The position numbers and the translations under genes are program-made. A stretch of 63,952 bases of DNA, filler included, from Octopus bimaculoides (lineage: Eukaryota): the NCBI RefSeq assembly GCF_001194135.2. It is 7 parts of 7 records of this genome, joined end to end, with 100 filler letters (N's around TTAATTAATTAA, not from the genome) between each part and the next. Parts side by side here need not be neighbours in the genome. Positions count along the whole stretch, not along the records: positions 7,068 to 16,335 come from NC_069006.1; 6 more parts are not named here. One strand, 5' to 3'. Shown here in pieces: positions 3,640 through 16,335 of the stretch. The notes below the pieces were generated by a model. That model was not told where the DNA came from. It did not search any database and was given only the letters and a program-made list of their open reading frames with translations. The stretch's first letter is position 1, and every line of letters starts with the position of its first letter.

Positions 3640-6519
3640 ACGCACACACAAGCAAATATTATTTCCTGGTAGGGTATTTCCAATGCAGAACTCAAGCTGA
3701 GCTCTGAGCTATCTACACTGTCGTATTCCTCAGGTTAAACAAATCCTACTTTCACGATCGTAAAACCGTTGAGCGGCCTGATCGAGGAGTAAAATATAAT
3801 CGAAATAGAGATAGATTTTAAAACATCTTTAGTGATCAGTTACAATTGTTTCTCTCCCAACTCTGCTTTCAATGCCAGTTCATACAAAATTGGAAGATGA
3901 AAATTTACATAACATTTGCACCATTGATGTTGGTCTGAGGAAATGCCATTCGACTGTTTAAAACCGCAAATAGTTTGTACATTTCCACCTTGATCTCTTG
4001 CATGAAGTGGCGTTGAAAGTAAAGTTGGTACAGAAACAATTGTAACTGATTATTACCTTGGCCTTCACTAAGGCGGAGGTATTCTTTTCAGTCGTGTTTG
4101 TTTGTTTGTCCGTGGACAGGATATCTCAAGAATTGCTAGGTGGTTTCGGATGAAACTTTTAGGGATGTTTGACCCTGTGACTGGCACGAAATGATTAGAA
4201 TTTGGGATCCATCCAGTACCGAATAAGGATTCTGGATTATTTTTCCTTTTTTTTTTTACGTCATTTTTGAGAGCGGTGGGGTTCATTTTTGGTATAGTCG
4301 TTTGTGAGAAAAGACAAGTTTATTTCAGATATTGCCATTTTAAAAGTGAGAGGACGTTGGTGTTTCTTTGGTAGAGATTTGCGCTCTTGGTAAAGAGGTT
4401 TTAACATCTATCACGATCGTCCTATTTCAGTTATATACATATGTACATATATATGGTTATACAGACATAGTACTTCAAGACGATCGGTCACCAGGAAATG
4501 TCGAATATATACACAGAAATTATATCTAATATTTTCCTGAAAAAGAAATAAAGAGTGCAACAAATAACTTATTTCAACCTAAATATCTTATCATTAATTA
4601 TTTTGATCGTAGAAATTTACGTATTATAGAACTAAACTAGTAGAAGATGCAGGCCCGATGTGTATTAACTGCAACGACACTTTGCATGGACATAAGTGTC
4701 TAATGATCGAATCTTCATAATAAAGCCGGAGAAACGTTATAGGCTCTTCGTGTTGGTATTTACGTATTGAACGAACGCAACTTAGTAGAGGATTCATTGC
4801 CGATATCTTTTAACGCAACAACATTGTTTTACATGGTGAATGTCGAACCTTCAAGAATATTCTTCGTTATAATAGATCTAATATATCTCTAACTTGAAAT
4901 ACATTCTGAAAGGTTTGAATTTTCATTTCAACTCTTTGTTAGATGTTTGACATCGTGGATTACCTTTACCAAGACGCAAGGGCAAACTTTAGACATAAAG
5001 GGAAACTGAGTCTTCATGGTCCATAGTTAATCAGCTCAGAAATGATAAATTCACATTGATAAAACAGTGATTTAATCCATAACTGCCAAGTTTTTCCATT
5101 CATATGTTTTGGCTGTGACAGGTGTCTTAGTAAAAGTAATGTTATAGCATTTAAATTGTCTTCATATGTGAATTATTTGGGAAATTAAGATAAATTTTTC
5201 GGAAAGTCCCAAAAGGGGATCGCTGAGAGAAAGCATCTTCACCCTTTTCTGTTTGATTGCAGTAATAAACATTTTAGCTTTTTGGGGACTATTGTATGAA
5301 ATGCGAATGTGTATGAAATGTTAATGAATGAATCAGATGGGAAATGCCAAAAAAAAAAAAAAGAACTTTTCGAAACAGTCAATATTTTTTTTGTTAAACT
5401 ATTGCGATTTATGACATAAAATGTCCTCTAGAATTAGCCAAAATATAACGACTTCAGTGAAAAGATATAAAGTTTTATTTTCAACTAAGAATAAAATTGT
5501 TTACGATGCCATGAAATTATGATGCCACTCAAAATACCTAAACCAGGTACATCATATGTATCTAATGAATACATACATAAGAATATGTGTGTGTGCGTGA
5601 GTGCGTGCGTGTGCCTCTGTGTGTGTGTATCCGGCTGAAATTACTGAAAATTAATGTTGAACATGTATGTTTGTGCAATTTTGGAAATCGTTTAAGGTTC
5701 TTCTATAGATGCTTCACATTACACCAGTTTATGTTTTAAATCAAAATTGCGATATAATCTACTGCACTTTTCATGCTTCTATGATCGATAAAATACGTAC
5801 CATCAAGTGCTGATATCGATTATAAATGCTACCCTTCTTTCTTTCTCCCACACAATTTGCGGTCTAATGTAAAACTGGGAATGGATATATTTAACCAATT
5901 ATACTTTCGTCTAAAACGGTTTTGTTAAGAGCTAAATGAGTACTAAACAATTTTATACTATGAAGATAAAAATGGTCTCCATTTCTAACATTAAATAATA
6001 CTTATTGAAAACCGTTAGAATTGGGTTACTCACATGTTAATTCCATCTAAAGAAATCTCATTGGTTGTGCTTGAAATATCTCAAGTTCCTTATAGACTTA
6101 AATGAAGGAATGCAAAGCGGCAAGCATTTCAAGCCGATATATGTTTACAAAGTATTTTTCATCGAGATATTATGTGGTGACTATCTTTTGAGCACTTTCC
6201 AGATGGGTGGTTAGAAAATTACTAAATGTTATCAAGATTATTAGATTTTCTTGACGAGTATACGAAGTAGATACCCAAAACTTATTGATACTAATAATAC
6301 ATGTGAATTGATGACCAGCATACATTGCAATAAAGCATCATCTAATAATTCAAACTAAACGGATTTTATTCAACGCTGTAAAACTAGCAATACCAAACGC
6401 GAAATACTCCTTAGTGCATCGCAAATTGTGCACTCTGTCTCATTTTCCAAACCACAGTACTCTCTTTCTCTCGTTCACCAAATAGTCTCTACTAACTGTC
6501 CAGAATCGTCACACCCTAA

Positions 6520-7067: not shown

Positions 7068-7217
7068 TGAGGAATTATTTACATTATTTACATTTGACGG
7101 ATATTTGTCCTCATCTTGTTTGTTTTTAACACGTTTCGGCTGATATACCCTCCAGCCTTCATCAGGTGTCTTGGGGAAATTTTGAACCTGAGTTCTCATT
7201 CCTAAAGTAGTTTTCGA

Positions 7218-7309
<92 letters not shown>

Positions 7310-7600
7310 TCATTGCCTGGAATCAAACTCAGAATCTTTGGTTAGTAGCCCGTGCTCTTAACCACTACACCATATGCCCACGGGCATATAGCGTAGTGGT
7401 TAAGATTCCAAGTTCGATTTCAGGCAGTGACCTGAATAATAATAATAACAATAATAATAACATTGAAAAATACCTTAGGAATGAGAATCCAGGTTCGAAA
7501 TTTCCCCAAAACACCTGATGAAGGCTGGAGGGTATATCAGCCGAAACATTGTGTTAACAACAAACAAGATGAGGACGAATATCCGTCAAACATAGATAAT
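7068..7600. repeat. Head-to-head inverted dimer of a tRNA-headed, (AAT)n-containing, Penelope-tailed element
   Basis: Symmetry centre at 7380-7381. Each arm has a tRNA-like head, an (AAT)n tract and a CCTGATGAAGGCTGGAGGGTATATCAGCCGAAAC motif. Confidence 0.8.
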
Positions 7601-7666
7601 GTAAATAAGGATTGTTTATTCTCCATTACTGATGTTATCTTGTAAAATTCTCTTTTCAACTTCAAG

Positions 7667-7876
7667 ATAAAACAATCAGCATTGATGTGGAATGGAGGAA
7701 AAATTTTCTAAAACCAGGAGCTACATTTCTTGTTCACCTGCACCAGACTACCTCAACCTTGATGGTAAATGTTACAGCAAAATTCTGTCTTCGAGGACGA
7801 TTCCATGTGTGTCTCCCAACCGTTGAAATTCTCACTGGTGTCCAGATTGAGAAACCGGCCAGAAATTGTACCAAAG
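7667..7876 (+). CDS. Candidate internal exon (phase 1-1, 70 codons) of an unidentified, possibly extracellular-domain protein
   Basis: Acceptor ttctcttttcaacttcaag, donor AAAG/gtcagt. The 210 nt are open: KTISIDVEWRKNFLKPGATFLVHLHQTTSTLMVNVTAKFCLRGRFHVCLPTVEILTGVQIEKPARNCTK. Unique sequence with FN3-like beta-strand patterning and NVT/NCT sequons. Confidence 0.5.
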
Positions 7877-7942
7877 GTCAGTAGTTCTTTAATCGAAATA
7901 ACTCTTCCCTTAAATCATTGGCTTTGTTCCAAAATTTGAAAC

Positions 7943-7979
<37 letters not shown>

Positions 7980-7988
7980 GTTATTGTT

Positions 7989-8026
<38 letters not shown>

Positions 8027-8189
8027 CATATAAGGCGGCATGCTGATAGGATTGTTAGCATGCTGGATGAAATGTTTAATTGCATTTCATCTGTCTCTAT
8101 AGTCTGAATTCAAATTCCACTGAAGTTGACTTTGCCTTTTTATCCCCCCCCCCCCCNNNNNNNNNNGCCCTAGTGGCAAAATTTGAAAC

Positions 8190-8249
<60 letters not shown>

Positions 8250-8250
<1 letters not shown>

Positions 8251-8812
8251 TTATGTTTGGCTTTTGCTTTGTATTTGTACAAGATGACTTCAGATCTCAT
8301 CCAGAAACCTCAAGAGACAAGTCCAAGTTGATGTTATGACTAGGGAACCATATTGCTTGGTTTTGCACAGAGTATTGCTCCAGAGAGTGTCTGTCAAAAC
8401 ATAAGAAAACTAGAAGGTGATAATGTGATCTTAAGATGACAGTAAAAGGTGTTTGCTATTATGTATATTTAGAAGTACTTTCAACAATATTTACAGATTA
8501 AAATGTTTTGGGGGATTATGTAGACAATATTTTTCATAGAGTATGAACAGTTCCCATGAGCACTGTTTTTTTTTTTAATTTCTTCCATTTTGGGGTTTCC
8601 TGGTGTCTGAGCCAGGTACCAATCAGCCCCTTTTGCTATCATCCCTAGGGTACCTATGACAACAGGTATTGTTTTAGTCTTGTGGTTCCACATTTTGCCA
8701 ATTCCTATTACAAGATCTTTATACTTGCTCAGTTTTTGGTAGGTCTTGACAGATGCGTTTATATCGATTGGGACAGCCATATCAATGAGGAGGCATGATT
8801 TTTGTCAGAAAC
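8250..8812 (-). mobile_element. R4/Dong-like (restriction-like endonuclease) LINE 3' end, copy 1
   Basis: LLIDMAVPIDINASVKTYQKLSKYKDL..KMWNHKTKTIPVVIGTLG; flanked on both sides by (ATT)n. Confidence 0.8.
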
Positions 8813-8834
8813 TATTATTATTATTATTATTATC

Positions 8835-8861
<27 letters not shown>

Positions 8862-8867
<6 letters not shown>

Positions 8868-9425
8868 GATTTTGTTGGAACTCCTGATGTCTTGCATACA
8901 TAGAAGGTTTTCTGCCTGCAGCCTACAGTACCATGCTATCCATTCTTTTCGGCTATCTAATACTTTCCTGATTATTCTGGCCATGCCAAGGAATCAAACC
9001 TTTAGTAACAGTTCTACAGGGCACTCTATTCCAGTTTCCTTTATATTCCCCCTTAATGCTTTCTGGTACTATTCCCAGGGACCCAGCAATAATTGGCACT
9101 GTCTTCGCCTTCTTCATTTTCCATAGCCAGGCTATTTCGTACTTAAGAGGGTTGTATTTATCTATCTTTGCGCATTCTTTTTTGTATGTTTGTAGGTTAA
9201 AGGAGCACACAACATCAACTATATAGTACACATGGTGCATCTTGTTGACCACCACCACTAGGTCCGGTCTGTTATGCTCTAGCACCTGATCTATTTGGAT
9301 TGGGAAATCCCAGAAGATTTTGCAAGTCTCCAATTCTGCCATGGTCTGCAGTTTGTGCTCATACCATGTGCCGCCCACTAGCTCCCACTTTTTGCACAGT
9401 TTCCAATGTAGCACTTTCACTACCT
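8862..9425 (-). mobile_element. R4/Dong-like LINE 3' end, copy 2
   Basis: KIFWDFPIQIDQVLEHNRPDLVVV..IVDVVCSF..KECAKIDKYNPLKYEIAWLWKMKKAKTVPIIAGSLG (PD-(D/E)xK REL domain). Confidence 0.85.
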
Positions 9426-9469
9426 TATCATGTCACCTATTATGATTATTGTTGTTGTTGTTGTTATTA

Positions 9470-9812
9470 TTTTATGGAAACTCACAGCTTATTTTGTTTG
9501 GTATGATGGAAAGTGTCAGCTGTCCACAACCAGCAGACTAAGGTGAAACTTGTTCACTGGTCATGCTTCAAAAACCCTGCGAAGAATTCCTGCAGTTCCA
9601 AGCAATGCTGATTTTTGCAGGTGTTCTCCCTTCACACTTGCACCAATCTTTCTCAGCCATGTTGGTAGCTGAGTGCTGATTCTTCCAAATGCGCCAGTTA
9701 CTATTGGGATCACCTCTACTCTCTTCATTGACCACAATCTTCGTATTTCCCACTTCAAATCGTCGTACTTGTTTATTTTTCTTCTTCTTCTTTTACAATG
9801 ATCCTGTTGTCT
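9470..9812 (-). mobile_element. R4/Dong-like LINE 3' end, copy 3
   Basis: KYDDLKWEIRRLWSMKRVEVIPIVTGAFG..LQKSALLGTAGILRRVFE; bordered by ATT/GTT repeats. Confidence 0.8.
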
Positions 9813-10754
9813 CTTCTATGATTATTATTATCAGCCACCTATGAACTTCCATCAATCGATGAGGAAACAAAGTCAATGACCCTTGAAGAATTCATTGATG
9901 CAGCTATTGATATGAATGTCAACCAGACGGAATTGTTGAAGATTGGAGACAGTTTACGTGGAGCCATGTCAGAAATAGTAAGTTGGTTACAACAGGATAT
10001 GTGTGTGTGTCTATATGTGTATTTGTGTTAAGTCTATGGGCGTGTTTGTGTAATGGCATGTGTGTGCATGTGTGCGTGTGTATGAGTGCATGTGAGTGAT
10101 TTTTGTGTGTGTGTGTGGGGGGGTGCATTTGTGTATATGTATTTGGGTGTATTTGTGTGTGTGGAGGGTTATGTGTGTATGTGCGTGTGTGATTGCATGT
10201 GTGTTCATGTGACTGCATGTGTGTATATCTGTAAGTCTGGGTATGTATGTATATGTGTGTGATTTCACATGTGTGTGTGCGTTTGTATGTGAGTGCGTGC
10301 ACGTGAGTGTGTGTGTGTGTTTGAATGTGAGTGCGTGCACGTGAGTGTGTGTGTGTGTATTTGTATGTGAGTGCATGCACGTGAGTGTGTGTGTGTATGT
10401 GTAAGCATGTGTATTTGTGTTAAATCTATGGGTGTGTCTGGTTGATTGTATGTGTGTGCATGCGTGTGTGTATGCGTGCATGTGAGTAATTGCATGTGTG
10501 TGTGTGGGTGAGTGCATTTGTGTATACGTATCTGGGTGTATTTGTGCGTGGGGGGTTATGTGTGTATGTGTGTGTGTGATTGCATGTGTCTGTATGCATT
10601 TGTGTAAGTCTGGGTATGTGTGCATATGTGTGTGATTGCACATGTGTGTGTGCATGTCCCACCATGGTGTGACATGCCTATACTATAGGGTTCCTAGAGT
10701 GGGGTGGTGGGGTGATGTGGGAGGAGGTTACAAATGGAAGCAGGGATATCAAGG

Positions 10755-11165
10755 ACATCATCATCATCATCATTACAGCCATCACCAACAAGAACAATGA
10801 CCACATCATCAACCATTATTATCACCACTGCCACCACTGCCACCACTGCCACTACTACTAATACCCCAACAACAACAGCAATTGCATGAAGAATGACAAC
10901 AAAATTATCATCACAACCGCCACAACCGCCACAACCGCCACAACCGCCACAACCGCCACAACCACCACAACTGCCACAACCACCACAACCGCCACAACCA
11001 AGAACAAAAACAACGACAAGAGTAACGGAAACAATGACATCATTGCTGTTGTCGTCGTCAACATCATCATCACCACCACCACCACCACTACCACCTCCAC
11101 CACCTTCACCATCACCACCACCACCACCACCAACAACAATAACAACAGCAATAATAGCAAAATGT
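10755..11165. repeat. Trinucleotide/9-mer low-complexity tract ((CAT)n, (CACAACCGC)n, (CAC)n)
   Basis: Direct reading; it yields Thr-, Pro- or Gly-rich ORFs in several frames. Confidence 0.9.
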
Positions 11166-11231
11166 AACAATTCTTTCAGTTAATCATGGTTTTGTGACTG
11201 TATTTCTGTTGTAGTGTTCTTGTTATTGTAG

Positions 11232-11423
11232 TTGTTGTCTTTGATTTCCAGCTCAATGAAAAAGATAGGAATCAGTCAAAAGCACGGGATGACTTTGAGG
11301 AGGAAATTCCCTCAGCTTCCACCGATATTTGCTGCAATGGTGATATACCTGTCAAACCCCTTGATATCACATTCTTCGATCTCCATTACATTTTCATGGT
11401 AGGACCAGTACCTTTGTCACTTG
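11232..11423 (+). CDS. Candidate internal exon (phase 1-1, 64 codons)
   Basis: Acceptor gttcttgttattgtag (alternative tttccag at 11251), donor TTG/gtaagt. Open frame VVFDFQLNEKDRNQSKARDDFEEEIPSASTDICCNGDIPVKPLDITFFDLHYIFMVGPVPLSL. Identity unknown. Confidence 0.45.
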
Positions 11424-11910
11424 GTAAGTATCATCACCACCATCTGCAATCATCCACCACCATTTCCCTTGCTACTATCATTACCACCACCATTACCACC
11501 GTAACAACAATCACCGACACTATAACCACCACATCACCATTTCAAAGTTACCATTGTAACTTTGAAAACTTAATCTAAGTGATAACTTGTGGATGTCTGG
11601 AAAACTACAATGGCTAGACAGGAATACCATTACATGAGCAAATGACCTTACACCAATAACAAATCCATGATGTAAACATGAGAAAAATTCCTTTAAGTGA
11701 GCATATAATAATATGTGCAGGGTTGAACCTCGTTAATTTTACAGTACTACCCTTCTAAGCATACTCAGATTCAATTACAAAGCAACGAAGAATGAACAAA
11801 GAACAGCAATTTATCAATACAAGTCAGTTCTAAAATTAATAATGCTTGTATTCAACACTAGAATAGCTTTAAACTTTAACTGATACTCCATTGAATTCAT
11901 CTTTTTGTAG

Positions 11911-11978
11911 AACTGCACAAAAACTCACACATATACATATTTATATTGACAAGCAGTATGTTACTGGTTATGGCATAA
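11911..11978 (+). CDS. Candidate terminal exon with hydrophobic C-terminal tail
   Basis: Acceptor catctttttgtag; the phase-1 frame gives ELHKNSHIYIFILTSSMLLVMA-stop. Confidence 0.3.
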
Positions 11979-12082
11979 AATTGAGAAGAGTGTTACTGAC
12001 AGTTTTGCTCCAGCTTGGCAATACTGAAGACTTTTCAGACATGCTACCAGGAAGTAGTGTGTGCTTTTTTTTTTTTGACTTA

Positions 12083-12800
12083 TGAGGGGTGGCTGAAAAG
12101 TTCATTAGCTGATTAAGATACTCTCATGGAACATGATCAAATGAGGTTTATTTTTCAACATAGTCTCCCCCCCCCCCTTGTGCTCCACACACTTCTTCCA
12201 TCGGTGTTGCAGTGTTTGGATCCCATTGGTAAAGAATCTTTCATCACGTTGGTCAAAAATGTCATCAACAACAGAGATGACGTCATCATCACAGTTATAT
12301 TTGGTTCCCAGCCATGTGTTTTTTTTTCATTTTGCCAAACATATGATCGTTAGATGGAGAATAGGGAGGGTGATCAAACAATTCAAAGCTACAGTCACAC
12401 ACAGCAGCCATTGAAACCAAGGACTTGTGGGCTGGAACATTGTCCTAATGAAACAAGACCCTTTCATTGATTTTTCCTTGGCATTTGGTCCTGATAGTCT
12501 TCATAACTCCCTTAGCAAGTTGGCATAGTACTCTCCATTGAAGATAGTCAACAAACGCAATACCTTTTGCTTTACCAAAAGAAACTGAGGCCATCACCTT
12601 CCCTGCAGACGAAATGACTGTGGCCTTCTTTGGAGCAGGTGAAGAGGGATGTTTCCACTGCATGGATTGTCTCTTTGTTTCTGACTCAAAGTGACAAAGC
12701 TAATATTTATCCTTGCTTAGGAAACATTCAAAGAAACCAGCTGGATTTACCTCAGACAATGTCAGATTTTTCCTTGATATGATCAACCTGGTGTGCTTTT
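12083..12800 (-). mobile_element. Mariner (DD34D-type) transposon 3' remnant
   Basis: TA plus TIR-like TGAGGGGTGGCTGAAAAGTT at 12081-12102. Degenerate transposase QWKHPSSPAPKKA..SAGKVMASV..VLFH continuing to ..GDYVEK-stop. Confidence 0.85.
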
Positions 12801-13364
12801 GGTCAGGTGTCAGAAGACCTTTGTCATGTCAAGTTCATTGTGTAGAATATTCTCAACTCTCTCATGGGATATGCTAATAGCATTGGCTATTTGATTTACA
12901 GTCATTCGCCTGTCATCCATGCTCTAACCACTGAGCCATGTACCTTCACACACACACACACATGTACATATTTTCCTCATGTTAAACTGTTAATCCTGAT
13001 ACATTTTTTCTATTTATGTTTTTTCCTCTCTCTTTCGATTTTCTATTTTCTTCTCATCCCTTTCTGTCAAAGACTGTAGGCTCAAAACATCAAAAGCTTG
13101 CCCATTTTTCTCGAGGTCAAACTAATACACCTACTTCTTGTTCCCTCACCTGTCTTTATTTTTTGTACATTGGAACCATTTTGTGTATTTATACACTCTC
13201 ATAAACAAATATTTCCCATCTTATGACTTTTATTATACGTGCGGACCACTGGAAATAAATTATTCTAATAATTTTTACTCTATATTTATATAGTTATATG
13301 TATGTGTGTGTGTGTATGTGTGTGTGTGTGTATACACACACACATACATATATATACATATATA

Positions 13365-15710
13365 TCATCACCATCATCATCATTTAGCATCTGCTTTCCA
13401 TGCTAGCAAAGGTTGGATGATTTGACTGGGGACTGGCGAACCAGATGGCTACACCAGACTCCAATCTAATCTGGCAGAGTTTCTTTCTACAGCTGGATGC
13501 CCTTCCTAACGCGAACCACTCCGAGAGTGTAGTGGGTGCTTTTTACGTGCCACCGGCACGATGGCCAGTCCAGCGATACCGGCAACAGCCATGCTCAAAT
13601 GGTGTTTTTTTACGTGCCACCTGCACAGGAGTCAGTCCAATGTTTTGTTCACATGCCACCGGCACAAGTGCCAGTAAGGCGAAGCTGGAAACGATTGCGC
13701 TCAAATGGTGCTTTTTACGTGCCACTGGCATGGAAGCGAGACCGCTGCTCTGGCAGTGCTCCCGCTCAGATGGTGCTGTTAGCACTCCACTGGCACGGGT
13801 GCCAGTCATCGAATTTGGTTCAGTTTCAATCTCACTTGCCCCAACAGGTCTTCGCAAACTGAGCTTAGTGTCAAATGAAGGAAGGTTGGCATGAGTGCCA
13901 GTCAATGAATTTGGTTCAATTTTCGATTTCGATTTCTCTTGCCTCAACAAGTTTTCGTAAGCAGGGTTTTGTGTCCAAAGAAGGAAAGGTACACATAAGT
14001 GGATTGGCTACACCCCTGGTAAAGGCCACGGGTTATGGTCTCACTTTTCTTGCCGGGTCTTCTCACGCACTGCATATTTCCCGGTCACTAGTCATAGCCT
14101 CAGTGAGGCCTAATGTTCGAAGGTCATGCTTCACCACCTCATCCCAGGTCTTCCTGGGTTTACCTCTTCCACAGGTACCCTCACCGCTAGGCTGTGGCAC
14201 TTTATCACACAGCTATCCTCATCCATTCTCGCTACATGACCATACCGGTGCAATAGTCTCTCTCGCACACCACAGCTGATGCTTCTTAGGTCCAACTTTT
14301 CTCTCAAGGTACTTACACTCTGTCTAGTATTCACACTGACATTACACATCCATCGGAGCATATTGCCTTCATTCCTTGCGAGCTTACGCATGTCCTCAGC
14401 AGTCACAGCCCATATTTTACTGCCATGTAGCATGGCTGTTCGTACACATGCATCAAACAGTCTGCCTTTCACTCTGAGTGAGAGGCCCTTTGTCACCAGC
14501 AGAGGTAAGAGCTCTCTGAACTTTGCCCAAGCTATTCTTATTCTAGCAGCTACACTTTCAGCGCACCCACCCCCCACTACTAACTTGGTCACCCAGGTAG
14601 CGGAAGCTATCAACTATGTCTAGTTTTTCTCCCTGGAATGAGACAGACGTTTTTTTCAGCATATTTACAGTGTTTATTGCACCTGAACATCTGCCACATA
14701 CAAAAACTAACTTCCTAGTTAACATTCCTTTGATATTACTGCACCTCTTATGTGTCCATAGCTTGCACTGGGTACATCTTATAGAGTTTCTACCTACGCC
14801 TTTTCAACAGATCAAGCAGGGCCATCTACCTGAAGTGGTTTGTGTTTTCTCTACCTTTCTACTTACTAGGACTTTGGTTTTAGCTCGGTTGACTCTAAGG
14901 CCCTTCGATTCTAATCGTTGCTTCCACACCTGAAACTTCTCCTCTAGTTCTGATAGTGACTCAGCAATTAGAACAAGGTCGTCAGCATAGAGGAGCTCCC
15001 AGGGGCAACCTGTCTTGAATTCCTCTGTTATTGCCTGGAGGGGGCTGAGGACTGAACCTTGGTGGACCCCTACCTCTACTCGGAATTCTTCACTGTACTC
15101 ATTGCCAACCCTCACCTTACTGACAGCATCCCTGTACATGGCTTGCACAGCTCTCACTAACCAATCATCTATCCCTAGTTTCCTCATTGACCACTAGACC
15201 CTGTCAAAGGCTTTCTCCATGTCAACGAAAGCCAGGTACAGAGGTTTATCTTTCACTAGGTATTTCTCCTGCAGCTGTCTTACCAGAAATCTAGCATCAG
15301 TGGTGCTTTTCCCTGGCACGAACCCAAACTGCATCTCATCTAAACTGACTCTCTCCCTAATTAGCTGGGCTATGACACTCCATGACTTTCATTAACTGAT
15401 CCAACAACTTGATGCCTCTGTAATTATTTGTGTCTAAAGAGTCACCTTTACCTTTGTAGCAGTTGACTATGGTGCTGCTACACCAGTCATTGGGTATGAC
15501 TCTATCATGTATCACCTGGTTAACTATAATGGTTACTAGGCTATAACCGACACTACCAGATATTTTGAACATCTCTGCAGTGATTCCTGATGAGCCGGGG
15601 GCTTTCCCTGTCTTCATACTCTTGATCGATTAATCTACCAAGGTACTGTCAATTAGGATAGCTGGTCCCTCTGTTGGGTTGACATTTGCCAGACTCTCTT
15701 TTTCCCATTC
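13365..15710 (-). mobile_element. 5'-truncated RTE-clade LINE (RT plus 3' UTR with (GAT)n tail)
   Basis: RT motifs GKAPG, NYRGIKLL, QFGFVPGKSTTDA, FVDMEKAFDRV, VGVHQGSVLSP, ELLYADDLVL across frameshifted ORFs 14131-15617; (CAT)n tail at 13365-13383. Confidence 0.93.
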
Positions 15711-15915
15711 ATTCATTCATTCATATATATAATATAAACATATATAATATATATACTCAAGTACCCAAAATATCAAGGAGTTTCTACCTCATAAACAGGA
15801 GTTACACCACAGTTATTTTGTGATCTTTGCTACCCTGGTATCCATTAACCAATTTATTTTGTCTGAGTTATATATTAATTAGGAGAAAATAAATACATAT
15901 AATAAAATATATATA

Positions 15916-16335
15916 TCATCATCATCATCATCATCGTTTAACGTCCGCTTTCCATGCTAGCATGGGTTGGACGATTTGACTGAGGACTGGTGAAACCGGA
16001 TGGCAACACCAGGCTCCAGTCTGATTTGGCAGAGTTTCTACAGCTGGATGCCCTTCCTAACGCCAACCACTCAATGAGTGTAGTGGGTGCTTTTACGTGT
16101 CACCCGCACAAAAACGGCCACGCTGGAAATGGTGTCTTTTATGTGCCACCCGCACAAGCCAGTCCAGGGGCACTGGCAACGATCTCGCTCGAAAATCCTA
16201 CAGGAGCCAGTCAGGCGGTACTGGCAACGGCCACGCTCAAAATGGTGCATCTCATGTGCCACCCGCAAGAGCCAGTCCAGGGGCACTGGCAACGATCTTA
16301 CTTGGCTTGCCGGGTCTTCTCACGCACAGCACATT
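15916..16335 (-). mobile_element. RTE LINE 3' end running into a gap
   Basis: (CAT)n followed by CGTTTAACGTCCGCTTTCCATGCTAGCATGGGTTGG, the same 3' UTR as the neighbouring RTE copies. Confidence 0.85.

What the first reader, a model, noticed from the sequence alone, without database searches (positions are those of the whole stretch)
7667..11978. Possible unannotated plus-strand cell-surface gene where RAD50 intron 3 should be
Seen: three unique-sequence blocks with good splice sites chain in frame through phase-1 junctions: 7667-7876 (210 nt), 11232-11423 (192 nt) and 11911-11978 (ends ELHKNSHIYIFILTSSMLLVMA-stop). Known: symmetric phase-1 exons are typical of FN3/Ig-type extracellular modules. 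Inferred: a membrane- or GPI-anchored protein with Cys and N-glycosylation sequons, antisense to and apparently nested in RAD50. Weaker upstream candidates are 522-611, 1869-1968, 2685-2767 and 5709-5796.
Basis: partly seen in the sequence, partly recalled or inferred. Interest (0 to 1): 0.72.

Follow-up and report, generated by a model that had tools for sequence, protein, structure and literature searches.

The report
Three exons of giant secreted protein

Summary

The 174-aa product matches residues ~1384-1530 of a 5,123-aa uncharacterised Haliotis asinina protein (library-wide E 6e-5; pairwise 9e-14). It also matches two amphioxus proteins. In the Haliotis gene the matching exons are 201/140/160 nt, with the same phases and junctions at the same aligned residues (CT[K/P]|, E[I]|L, L|G). 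That settles it.

Block 11911-11978, which supplied the "hydrophobic tail and stop", has no homology. It is also chance-level: 106 of 249 downstream AG sites give an equally long open frame. The homologues continue with a 71-nt "FGAGG" exon that is absent from this piece.

There is no FN3/Ig signal in these exons and no evidence of a membrane or GPI anchor. The assembly gap (8157-8166) lies in intron 1, inside repeats, and no frame crosses it.

No close match exists in 1.84 billion representative proteins, so these exons may be unannotated. Function is unknown; the protein is probably an extracellular matrix or adhesion glycoprotein.

The parts
7667..7876 (+). Exon A, 210 nt, phase 1 in / phase 1 out. 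Encodes KTISIDVEWRKNFLKPGATFLVHLHQTTSTLMVNVTAKFCLRGRFHVCLPTVEILTGVQIEKPARNCTK(+G..).
   Evidence: Boundaries are caag|AT and AAG|gtcagt, with a single open frame out of six. Similar to Haliotis residues 1365-1430 (18/66 identical; z=6.9) and to B. lanceolatum 235-271 (tblastn E 0.03). The Haliotis counterpart exon is 201 nt, has the same phases and ends at the same aligned CT[K/P]|G.
7877..9834 (+). Intron 1 (1,958 nt as assembled). Holds the assembly gap 8157-8166, (ATT)n/(GTT)n microsatellites, SINE-like 3' ends and three minus-strand retroelement ORF remnants (8481-8780, 8953-9420, 9561-9758).
   Evidence: No frame of the gene model crosses the gap.
9835..9977 (+). Encodes (A)TYELPSIDEETKSMTLEEFIDAAIDMNVNQTELLKIGDSLRGAMSEI.
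   Evidence: Boundaries are tattatcag|CC and ATA|gtaagt, with one open frame out of six. It is needed to keep A and C(11252) in frame. The Haliotis counterpart exon is 140 nt with the same phases and ends at the aligned position (ILHE| against MSEI|); amphioxus also has a 1→0 exon here. Sequence similarity alone is weak: 4/47 identical and 22 positive. In context it beats shuffled B in 292 of 300 trials. The acceptor has a weak pyrimidine tract (9 of 15).
9978..11251 (+). Intron 2 (1,274 nt). TG-rich low-complexity sequence is followed by CA/CCA-rich low-complexity sequence.
11252..11423 (+). Exon C, 172 nt, phase 0 in / phase 1 out. Encodes LNEKDRNQSKARDDFEEEIPSASTDICCNGDIPVKPLDITFFDLHYIFMVGPVPLSL(+G..).
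   Evidence: Boundaries are tttgatttccag|CTC and CTTG|gtaagt. tblastn of three homologues hits 11321-11425 with E 3e-7 to 7e-6. 20/54 residues are identical to Haliotis, including the FMVGP(V/I)P..LG motif. The counterpart exons in Haliotis (160 nt) and amphioxus (157 nt) start in phase 0 and end in phase 1 inside the same Gly codon.
11424..16335 (+). Start of intron 3 (more than 4.9 kb; the next exon is not in the piece). Contains a mariner-type transposase remnant (~12100-12930, minus), non-LTR retrotransposon remnants with reverse transcriptase (~13364-15700, minus) and the 3' end of a second copy (15918-16335).
   Evidence: No match was found anywhere in the piece to the conserved 71-nt 'FGAGG' exon of the homologues. 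Pfam gives Transposase_1 and RVT_1.

Best explanation
Window 7667-11423 (+) carries three consecutive internal coding exons: A 7667-7876, B 9835-9977 and C 11252-11423. They belong to a very large secreted multidomain glycoprotein gene. This is the counterpart, in this probably cephalopod genome, of Haliotis asinina XP_067664253.1 (5,123 aa) and of amphioxus Hypp3968 / Bbelb_394410.

Shown:
- The exons are spliced A→B→C through canonical GT-AG introns full of transposon remnants and microsatellites.
- Together they encode about 174 residues, corresponding to residues ~1365-1531 of the abalone protein.

Suggested only by low-confidence models (mean pLDDT 38.5 and 33.5):
- Exon A encodes a Cys-containing segment of beta-strands.
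- Exon B and the start of C encode a poorly conserved helical linker.
- The end of C begins the best-conserved hydrophobic, Gly-rich core (FMVGPxP..LG|FGAGG...).

Inferred:
- The gene extends far beyond both ends of the piece, which holds about 3% of the expected coding sequence.
- By homology the protein has a signal peptide, a lipoprotein/vitellogenin-type N-terminal domain, a PAN/apple domain, many FN3-like repeats and cadherin-like domains.
- It is most likely an extracellular matrix or adhesion glycoprotein, possibly lipid-binding, and not a membrane-anchored one.
For: - An exhaustive HMMER search of 1.84 billion representatives gave one real hit: P0003, query 24-174 against residues 1388-1530, E 6.2e-5. 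Pairwise blastp gave 9e-14 across all three exons with few gaps.
- P0003 is XP_067664253.1, Haliotis asinina.
- tblastn of the Haliotis and two Branchiostoma proteins hits exon C (E 3e-7 to 7e-6) and exon A (E 0.03).
- Shuffle tests gave A z=6.9, C z=19.2 and A+B+C z=25.
- Exon maps of the Haliotis (L001) and B. lanceolatum (L002) genes show the same order of exon phases (1→1, 1→0, 0→1). Sizes are near-identical: 210/143/172 nt here against 201/140/160 nt in Haliotis. Junctions fall at the same aligned residues.
- Each exon has one open frame of six and canonical splice sites, and lies outside the repeats.
- Domain content of the homologue: Vitellogenin_N 8.8e-8, PAN_1, fn3 1.4e-10, Big_9/cadherin-like.
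- Its only hydrophobic stretch is residues 1-19.
Against: - Identity to the nearest homologue is only about 26%, and only one protein in the library reached significance with the window's peptide.
- Exon B is not significantly similar on its own (z=1.2). It rests on splice sites, frame, length and intron-position conservation.
- No RNA evidence could be consulted, so expression and the exact junctions are inferred.
- The rest of the gene is outside the piece, so an intact full-length gene is not shown.
- The function of the whole family is untested. Structure prediction failed (pLDDT 38.5 and 33.5), and there are no relatives in PDB or Pfam for this region.
Confidence: 0.88

Rival explanations
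1. One reading: a small plus-strand gene whose last three exons are 7667-7876, 11232-11423 and 11911-11978. It would encode a membrane- or GPI-anchored FN3/Ig-type protein ending in ...ILTSSMLLVMA-stop.
For: The three blocks do chain in frame with AG/GT boundaries. The last 15 residues are hydrophobic.
Against: - Block 11911-11978 has no similarity to any homologue and is chance-level (106 of 249 AG sites).
- The homologues continue for thousands of residues with a conserved 71-nt exon after the L|G junction.
- Exon B, with conserved length and phase, lies between the first two blocks.
- There is no fn3 or Ig Pfam hit.
- The abalone protein has no C-terminal hydrophobic segment.
Confidence: 0.03
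2. The three exons are relics of a decaying or fragmented gene copy (a pseudogene or partial duplicate). They are still intact here, but the gene no longer makes a full-length protein.
For: The introns are heavily invaded by transposons. No close cephalopod protein was found in the large protein collections. Only three exons can be seen.
Against: All three frames are intact and all six splice dinucleotides are canonical. The conserved Cys residues, the sequon and the FMVGPxP..LG motif are kept. Transposon-filled introns are normal for large invertebrate genomes.
Confidence: 0.07
3. Chance open frames or transposon-derived coding remnants that only look like exons.
For: A simple AG/ORF/GT screen also finds exon-like segments inside transposon remnants of the same piece.
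Against: The blocks show significant similarity to single-copy host genes of abalone and amphioxus, with conserved intron positions and phases. They have no transposon domain hit and are not repeated within the piece.
Confidence: 0.01

Closest known systems
Haliotis asinina XP_067664253.1 / Haliotis rubra XP_046569948.1 (LOC124278272), uncharacterised 5,123-5,124-aa secreted proteins
   Same: The only significant library hit. The alignment spans all three exons (residues ~1384-1530). The three corresponding exons have the same phases, nearly the same lengths and the same junction positions. Conserved Cys residues, an N-x-T sequon and the FMVGP(I/V)P..LG motif are shared.
   Different: Identity is only about 26%. 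The window shows 3 exons of a gene that in abalone spans 47.7 kb. Introns here are longer and full of transposons. Orthology as opposed to paralogy cannot be decided from this piece.
Branchiostoma lanceolatum Hypp3968 (746 aa) and B. belcheri Bbelb_394410 (719 aa), PAN-domain proteins
   Same: They share the end of exon A (CL.P.EIL.GVQI) and of exon C (TFF......FMVGPIPMYLG). The phase-0 B/C junction and the phase-1 junction inside the Gly codon after exon C are the same, followed by a 71-nt FGAGG exon.
   Different: The A/B junction sits about 10 residues further on. The gene models look partial: the B. belcheri model skips the A-end and B region, and the B. lanceolatum model contains odd repeat-derived mini-exons.
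Large lipid transfer proteins (vitellogenin / apolipophorin / apoB; Pfam Vitellogenin_N)
   Same: The abalone homologue has a Vitellogenin_N match above Pfam's cut-off (31.6 bits, residues 246-534).
   Different: The window's exons lie about 800 residues downstream of that domain and match no Pfam family. The remaining architecture (PAN, FN3-like repeats, cadherin-like domains) is unlike classical members. Membership is not claimed.
FN3/Ig-module cell-surface proteins
   Same: The protein is extracellular, Cys- and sequon-containing. The full-length homologue does have FN3-like repeats elsewhere, and exon A is a symmetric phase 1-1 exon.
   Different: These exons give no fn3 or Ig hit. Exons B and C are not phase 1-1. 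The secondary structure in the (low-confidence) models includes a long helical stretch. No anchor signal is supported.

Membership tests
Haliotis XP_067664253-like giant secreted proteins (unnamed family) | Significant sequence similarity over the central region (~residues 1365-1531 of the abalone protein) | tested here: met
   E 6.2e-5 against 1.84 billion proteins. Pairwise 9e-14. z=25 against shuffles.
Haliotis XP_067664253-like giant secreted proteins (unnamed family) | Same exon-intron structure: positions and phases of the introns around this region | tested here: met
   Phases are 1→1, 1→0, 0→1 in both. Exon sizes are 210/143/172 nt against 201/140/160 nt. Junctions are at CT[K/P]|G, E(I)|L and L|G. 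In amphioxus two of three junctions are identical.
Haliotis XP_067664253-like giant secreted proteins (unnamed family) | Conserved FMVGP(I/V)P..LG motif followed by the 71-nt FGAGG exon | tested here: inconclusive
   The motif is present at the end of exon C. The FGAGG exon was not found in 11424-16335, so it presumably lies beyond the end of the piece.
Haliotis XP_067664253-like giant secreted proteins (unnamed family) | Full architecture: signal peptide, Vitellogenin_N, PAN, FN3-like repeats, cadherin-like domains | not testable with these tools
   This was seen only in the abalone protein. The rest of the window's gene is outside the piece.
FN3 / Ig-type extracellular modules | Match to fn3 or Ig-family profiles, or a beta-sandwich fold | tested here: not met
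   The Pfam scan of the spliced peptide found nothing but a sub-threshold DUF. The AlphaFold models had too low confidence to judge the fold.
FN3 / Ig-type extracellular modules | One module per symmetric phase 1-1 exon | tested here: not met
   Only exon A is 1-1. B is 1-0 and C is 0-1.
GPI- or single-pass membrane-anchored proteins | C-terminal hydrophobic segment that is part of the real coding sequence | tested here: not met
   The hydrophobic tail exists only in block 11911-11978, which has no homology and is chance-level. The abalone homologue has no hydrophobic stretch other than residues 1-19.
Gene nested antisense in a RAD50 intron | RAD50 exons on the minus strand flanking the locus | not testable with these tools
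Minus-strand ORFs in this piece are transposon remnants or low-complexity sequence.

The most novel reading that the evidence does not exclude
The exons belong to an undescribed family of giant secreted proteins conserved between molluscs and cephalochordates. Its central region, including the FMVGPxP..LGFGAGG core, matches no Pfam family and no solved structure. In this genome the gene, or at least this part of it, is missing from public protein annotations. An exhaustive search of 1.84 billion representatives found nothing closer than 27% identity.
Probability: 0.45. Interest if true: 0.35.

Novelty: new member of a known kind. Interest (0 to 1): 0.22.

Why it matters
This is mainly an annotation result. 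It replaces a speculative small nested cell-surface gene with a firm reading: three internal exons of a giant secreted protein gene. It also gives exact exon coordinates that could repair or seed a gene model.

A secondary point is the protein family itself. It is large, conserved from molluscs to amphioxus and entirely uncharacterised, and its central region has no known domain. That could interest people working on invertebrate extracellular matrix or lipoprotein-like proteins. Nothing here suggests an unusual mechanism.

Tried and rejected
- **Word-indexed protein searches.** The search with the spliced peptide found nothing. The search with a four-sequence alignment also found nothing, not even the alignment's own members, so that tool's negatives are weak here.
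- **Spurious representative hits.** Two strong-looking hits (P0001 and P0002, E 6e-26 and 4e-12) were rejected. They are summed weak matches to tandem-repeat proteins, with 24 and 6 stretches.
- **Pfam and PDB.** Pfam on the peptide gave no family. PDB sequence searches with the peptide, with the family alignment and with two large parts of the abalone protein gave nothing significant. The E 0.04 and 0.9 hits were disregarded.
- **AlphaFold2.** The peptide and the abalone region, each with a 4-sequence alignment, gave pLDDT 38.5 and 33.5. No fold search was run because it would be meaningless.
- **Exact-product look-ups.** Three window ORFs were looked up to identify the species or find transcripts. 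None was on record.
- **RNA genes.** tRNA and Rfam scans of the piece found nothing.
- **Literature.** A search for the domain combination returned no paper.
- **Neighbouring exons.** Searches for the next (FGAGG) and previous exons of the homologues inside the piece found neither.
- **A minus-strand gene.** This was considered and rejected, because every minus frame of the three blocks has stops.
Full report
**What is in the piece.** Only 7068-16335 is real sequence. It is AT-rich and crowded with (ATT)n microsatellites, TG- and CA-rich low-complexity tracts and retroelement remnants. I think it comes from an octopus-type cephalopod, because the CAAAATTTGAAACC(ATT)n repeat ends resemble an abundant octopus SINE. 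That rests on my memory and was not verified with a tool.

**Checking the observation.** They have AG/GT boundaries and chain in frame to a stop.
- Blocks 7667-7876 and 11232-11423 each have exactly one open frame out of six. Every minus-strand frame has stops.
- None of the blocks overlaps a repeat family found within the piece.
- Reading the intervening sequence, I found another exon-like block at 9835-9977 (tattatcag|CC...ATA|gtaagt, 143 nt), again with one open frame of six.
- This block accepts the phase-1 end of the first block and ends in phase 0. That fits the much better acceptor tttgatttccag|C at 11252 in front of the second block.
- The chain A (7667-7876), B (9835-9977), C (11252-11423) reads through without a stop and gives 174 residues.

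**The assembly gap (8157-8166).** It lies in the A-B intron, 281 nt past A's donor and 1,668 nt before B's acceptor.
- It is flanked by a poly-C run and by a repeat whose 3' end plus (ATT)n tail occurs both before (about 7926) and after (about 8176) the gap.
- No frame of the model crosses it. The ORFs listed across it are microsatellite translations.
- In the homologues the A-like and B-like exons are adjacent in the mRNA, and the alignment leaves no residues unaccounted for.
- The gap therefore affects only intron length.

**Homology.**
- The word-indexed search and Pfam found nothing for the 174-aa peptide.
- The exhaustive HMMER search of 1.84 billion representatives returned three proteins. 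Two are tandem-repeat proteins whose scores are sums of many weak stretches, and I discarded them.
- The third, P0003, matches query residues 24-174 in one stretch (its residues 1388-1530, E 6.2e-5 library-wide). Pairwise blastp gives 9e-14 at 26% identity over 156 columns that span all three exons.
- P0003 is XP_067664253.1, an uncharacterised 5,123-aa protein of Haliotis asinina, with a twin in H. rubra.
- Searching with its central region found two amphioxus proteins, Bbelb_394410 and Hypp3968.
- tblastn of all three against the piece hits the end of exon C (IPVKPLDITFFDLHYIFMVGPVPLSLG against IPVKSIDMTFFAVRNRFMVGPIPMNLG; E 3e-7 to 7e-6). Hypp3968 also hits exon A (E 0.03). Nothing else in the piece is hit.
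- Against shuffled controls, exon A scores z=6.9 and exon C z=19.2 versus Haliotis. Exon B alone is not significant (z=1.2), but in context it beats shuffled B in 292 of 300 trials. Block D (11911-11978) scores at or below random.

**Gene structure, the decisive test.** I fetched the Haliotis gene (L001, 47.7 kb) and the B. lanceolatum gene (L002) and mapped the proteins onto them.

| Exon | Window | Haliotis | B. lanceolatum |
|---|---|---|---|
| A | 210 nt, 1→1, ends ...NCTK\|G | 201 nt, 1→1, ends ...MCTP\|G | 124 nt as modelled, 0→1; the junction into B sits about 10 residues later |
| B | 143 nt, 1→0, ends ...MSEI\| | 140 nt, 1→0, ends ...ILHE\| | 173 nt, 1→0 |
| C | 172 nt, 0→1, ends ...PLSL\|G | 160 nt, 0→1, ends ...PMNL\|G | 157 nt, 0→1, ends ...PMYL\|G |
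| next | not in the piece | 71 nt, FGAGG... | 71 nt, FGAGG... |

- Three introns at the same aligned positions and phases, with near-identical exon lengths, cannot be explained by chance ORFs or by a transposon origin. They also validate exon B, whose sequence is poorly conserved (4/47 identical, 22 positive).

**What follows exon C.** Neither the FGAGG exon nor the preceding Haliotis exon is present anywhere in 7068-16335.
- The third intron is therefore longer than 4.9 kb. It is filled with a mariner-type remnant and non-LTR retrotransposon remnants on the minus strand.
It has no homology, overlaps simple sequence, and is unremarkable statistically: 106 of 249 downstream AG sites open at least 22 codons in the required phase, 17 of them with a pyrimidine-rich upstream tract.

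**What the protein is.**
- The abalone homologue has a signal-peptide-like N-terminus as its only hydrophobic stretch, 78 Cys and 57 sequons.
- Pfam finds Vitellogenin_N (8.8e-8), PAN_1, fn3 (1.4e-10) and Big_9/cadherin-like domains in it.
- The part matching the window lies between the Vitellogenin_N region and the PAN domain. It hits no Pfam family and no PDB sequence.
- AlphaFold2 with the shallow four-sequence alignment gave unusable models (pLDDT 38.5 and 33.5). At low confidence they suggest strands in exon A, a long helix over exon B and the start of C, and strands further on.
- My best reading, by inference from the architecture, is a giant secreted extracellular matrix or adhesion glycoprotein, perhaps lipid-binding through its lipoprotein-like N-terminus. 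The window encodes a disulphide-containing strand segment, a variable helical linker and the start of the conserved hydrophobic Gly-rich core. Function is untested for the whole family.

- Right: a real plus-strand gene, probably extracellular, and possibly unannotated. No protein closer than 27% identity exists in a collection that does hold RefSeq mollusc and GenBank amphioxus proteins. I could not verify that this species' proteome is in that collection.
- Wrong or unsupported: the exon chain, the all-phase-1 pattern, the FN3/Ig module, the membrane or GPI anchor, and the stop at 11978.
- The RAD50 nesting comes from other pieces and cannot be judged here.

**Verdict.** This is an ordinary but genuine fragment of a large, conserved, uncharacterised gene. 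It is a new, probably cephalopod, member of a catalogued but unstudied family. It has low general interest and some value for annotation.

Noticed in passing
window 7068-7640: A long imperfect palindrome sits immediately upstream of exon A. The arms 7075-7245 and 7435-7608 are 86-91% complementary, and an inner pair is 7271-7338 / 7402-7469. (ATT)n/(AAT)n tracts and a tRNA-like-looking core lie in the middle. It looks like two inverted copies of a short retroelement or a MITE-like hairpin. ARAGORN and Rfam find no RNA gene there.
   Followed up: partly
window 8481-8780, 8953-9420, 9561-9758 (minus strand): Three truncated minus-strand ORFs in intron 1 share a motif (KY..L..EI..LW.MK...IP(I/V)V.G.LG). 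From memory it resembles the C-terminal end of non-LTR retrotransposon ORF2. Each lies next to an (ATT)n/(GTT)n microsatellite, and two share the junction TTTTATG. None has a Pfam match.
   Followed up: partly
window 9990-11150: Intron 2 is almost entirely low-complexity sequence. About 650 nt of TG-rich sequence is followed by about 400 nt of CA/CCA/CCG-rich sequence. GC skew swings from +0.69 to -0.43, and this creates many long spurious ORFs on both strands.
   Followed up: no
window ~12100-12930 (minus strand): A mariner/Tc1-type transposase remnant (Pfam Transposase_1, E 4.7e-4 on ORF 12445-12663), broken by frameshifts.
   Followed up: partly
window 13364-15700 and 15918-16335 (minus strand): A non-LTR retrotransposon remnant with reverse transcriptase (RVT_1, E 3e-11), split into several ORFs. 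Its presumed 3' part (13364-14078) has internal 65-113-nt sub-repeats and ends in a (CAT)n-type tract. That part recurs at 80-93% identity at 15918-16335, so two copies lie in tandem, the second cut by the end of the piece.
   Followed up: partly
Using 11252 without B would not. This could allow an in-frame B-skipping isoform, but there is no evidence for one.
   Followed up: no
L002 8269-8625 (B. lanceolatum) and P0005 (B. belcheri): The amphioxus gene models look imperfect. Hypp3968 contains two mini-exons that encode a repeated TGCITTCLLYTGLRL peptide from tandem repeats. The B. belcheri model skips the region corresponding to the end of exon A and all of exon B. The next annotated gene in L002 (809 aa, faint fn3) may be the continuation of the same gene.
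   Followed up: no
P0003 residues ~1000-1100 (Haliotis): By eye, the abalone protein has a stretch resembling a degenerate peptidase-M23/LytM-like barrel (GVDVSARRGLTIVNPVAGLV...IGTAGDTRCVPNFIHVALR) upstream of the region that matches the window. Pfam reported no such hit at E ≤ 0.01.
   Followed up: no
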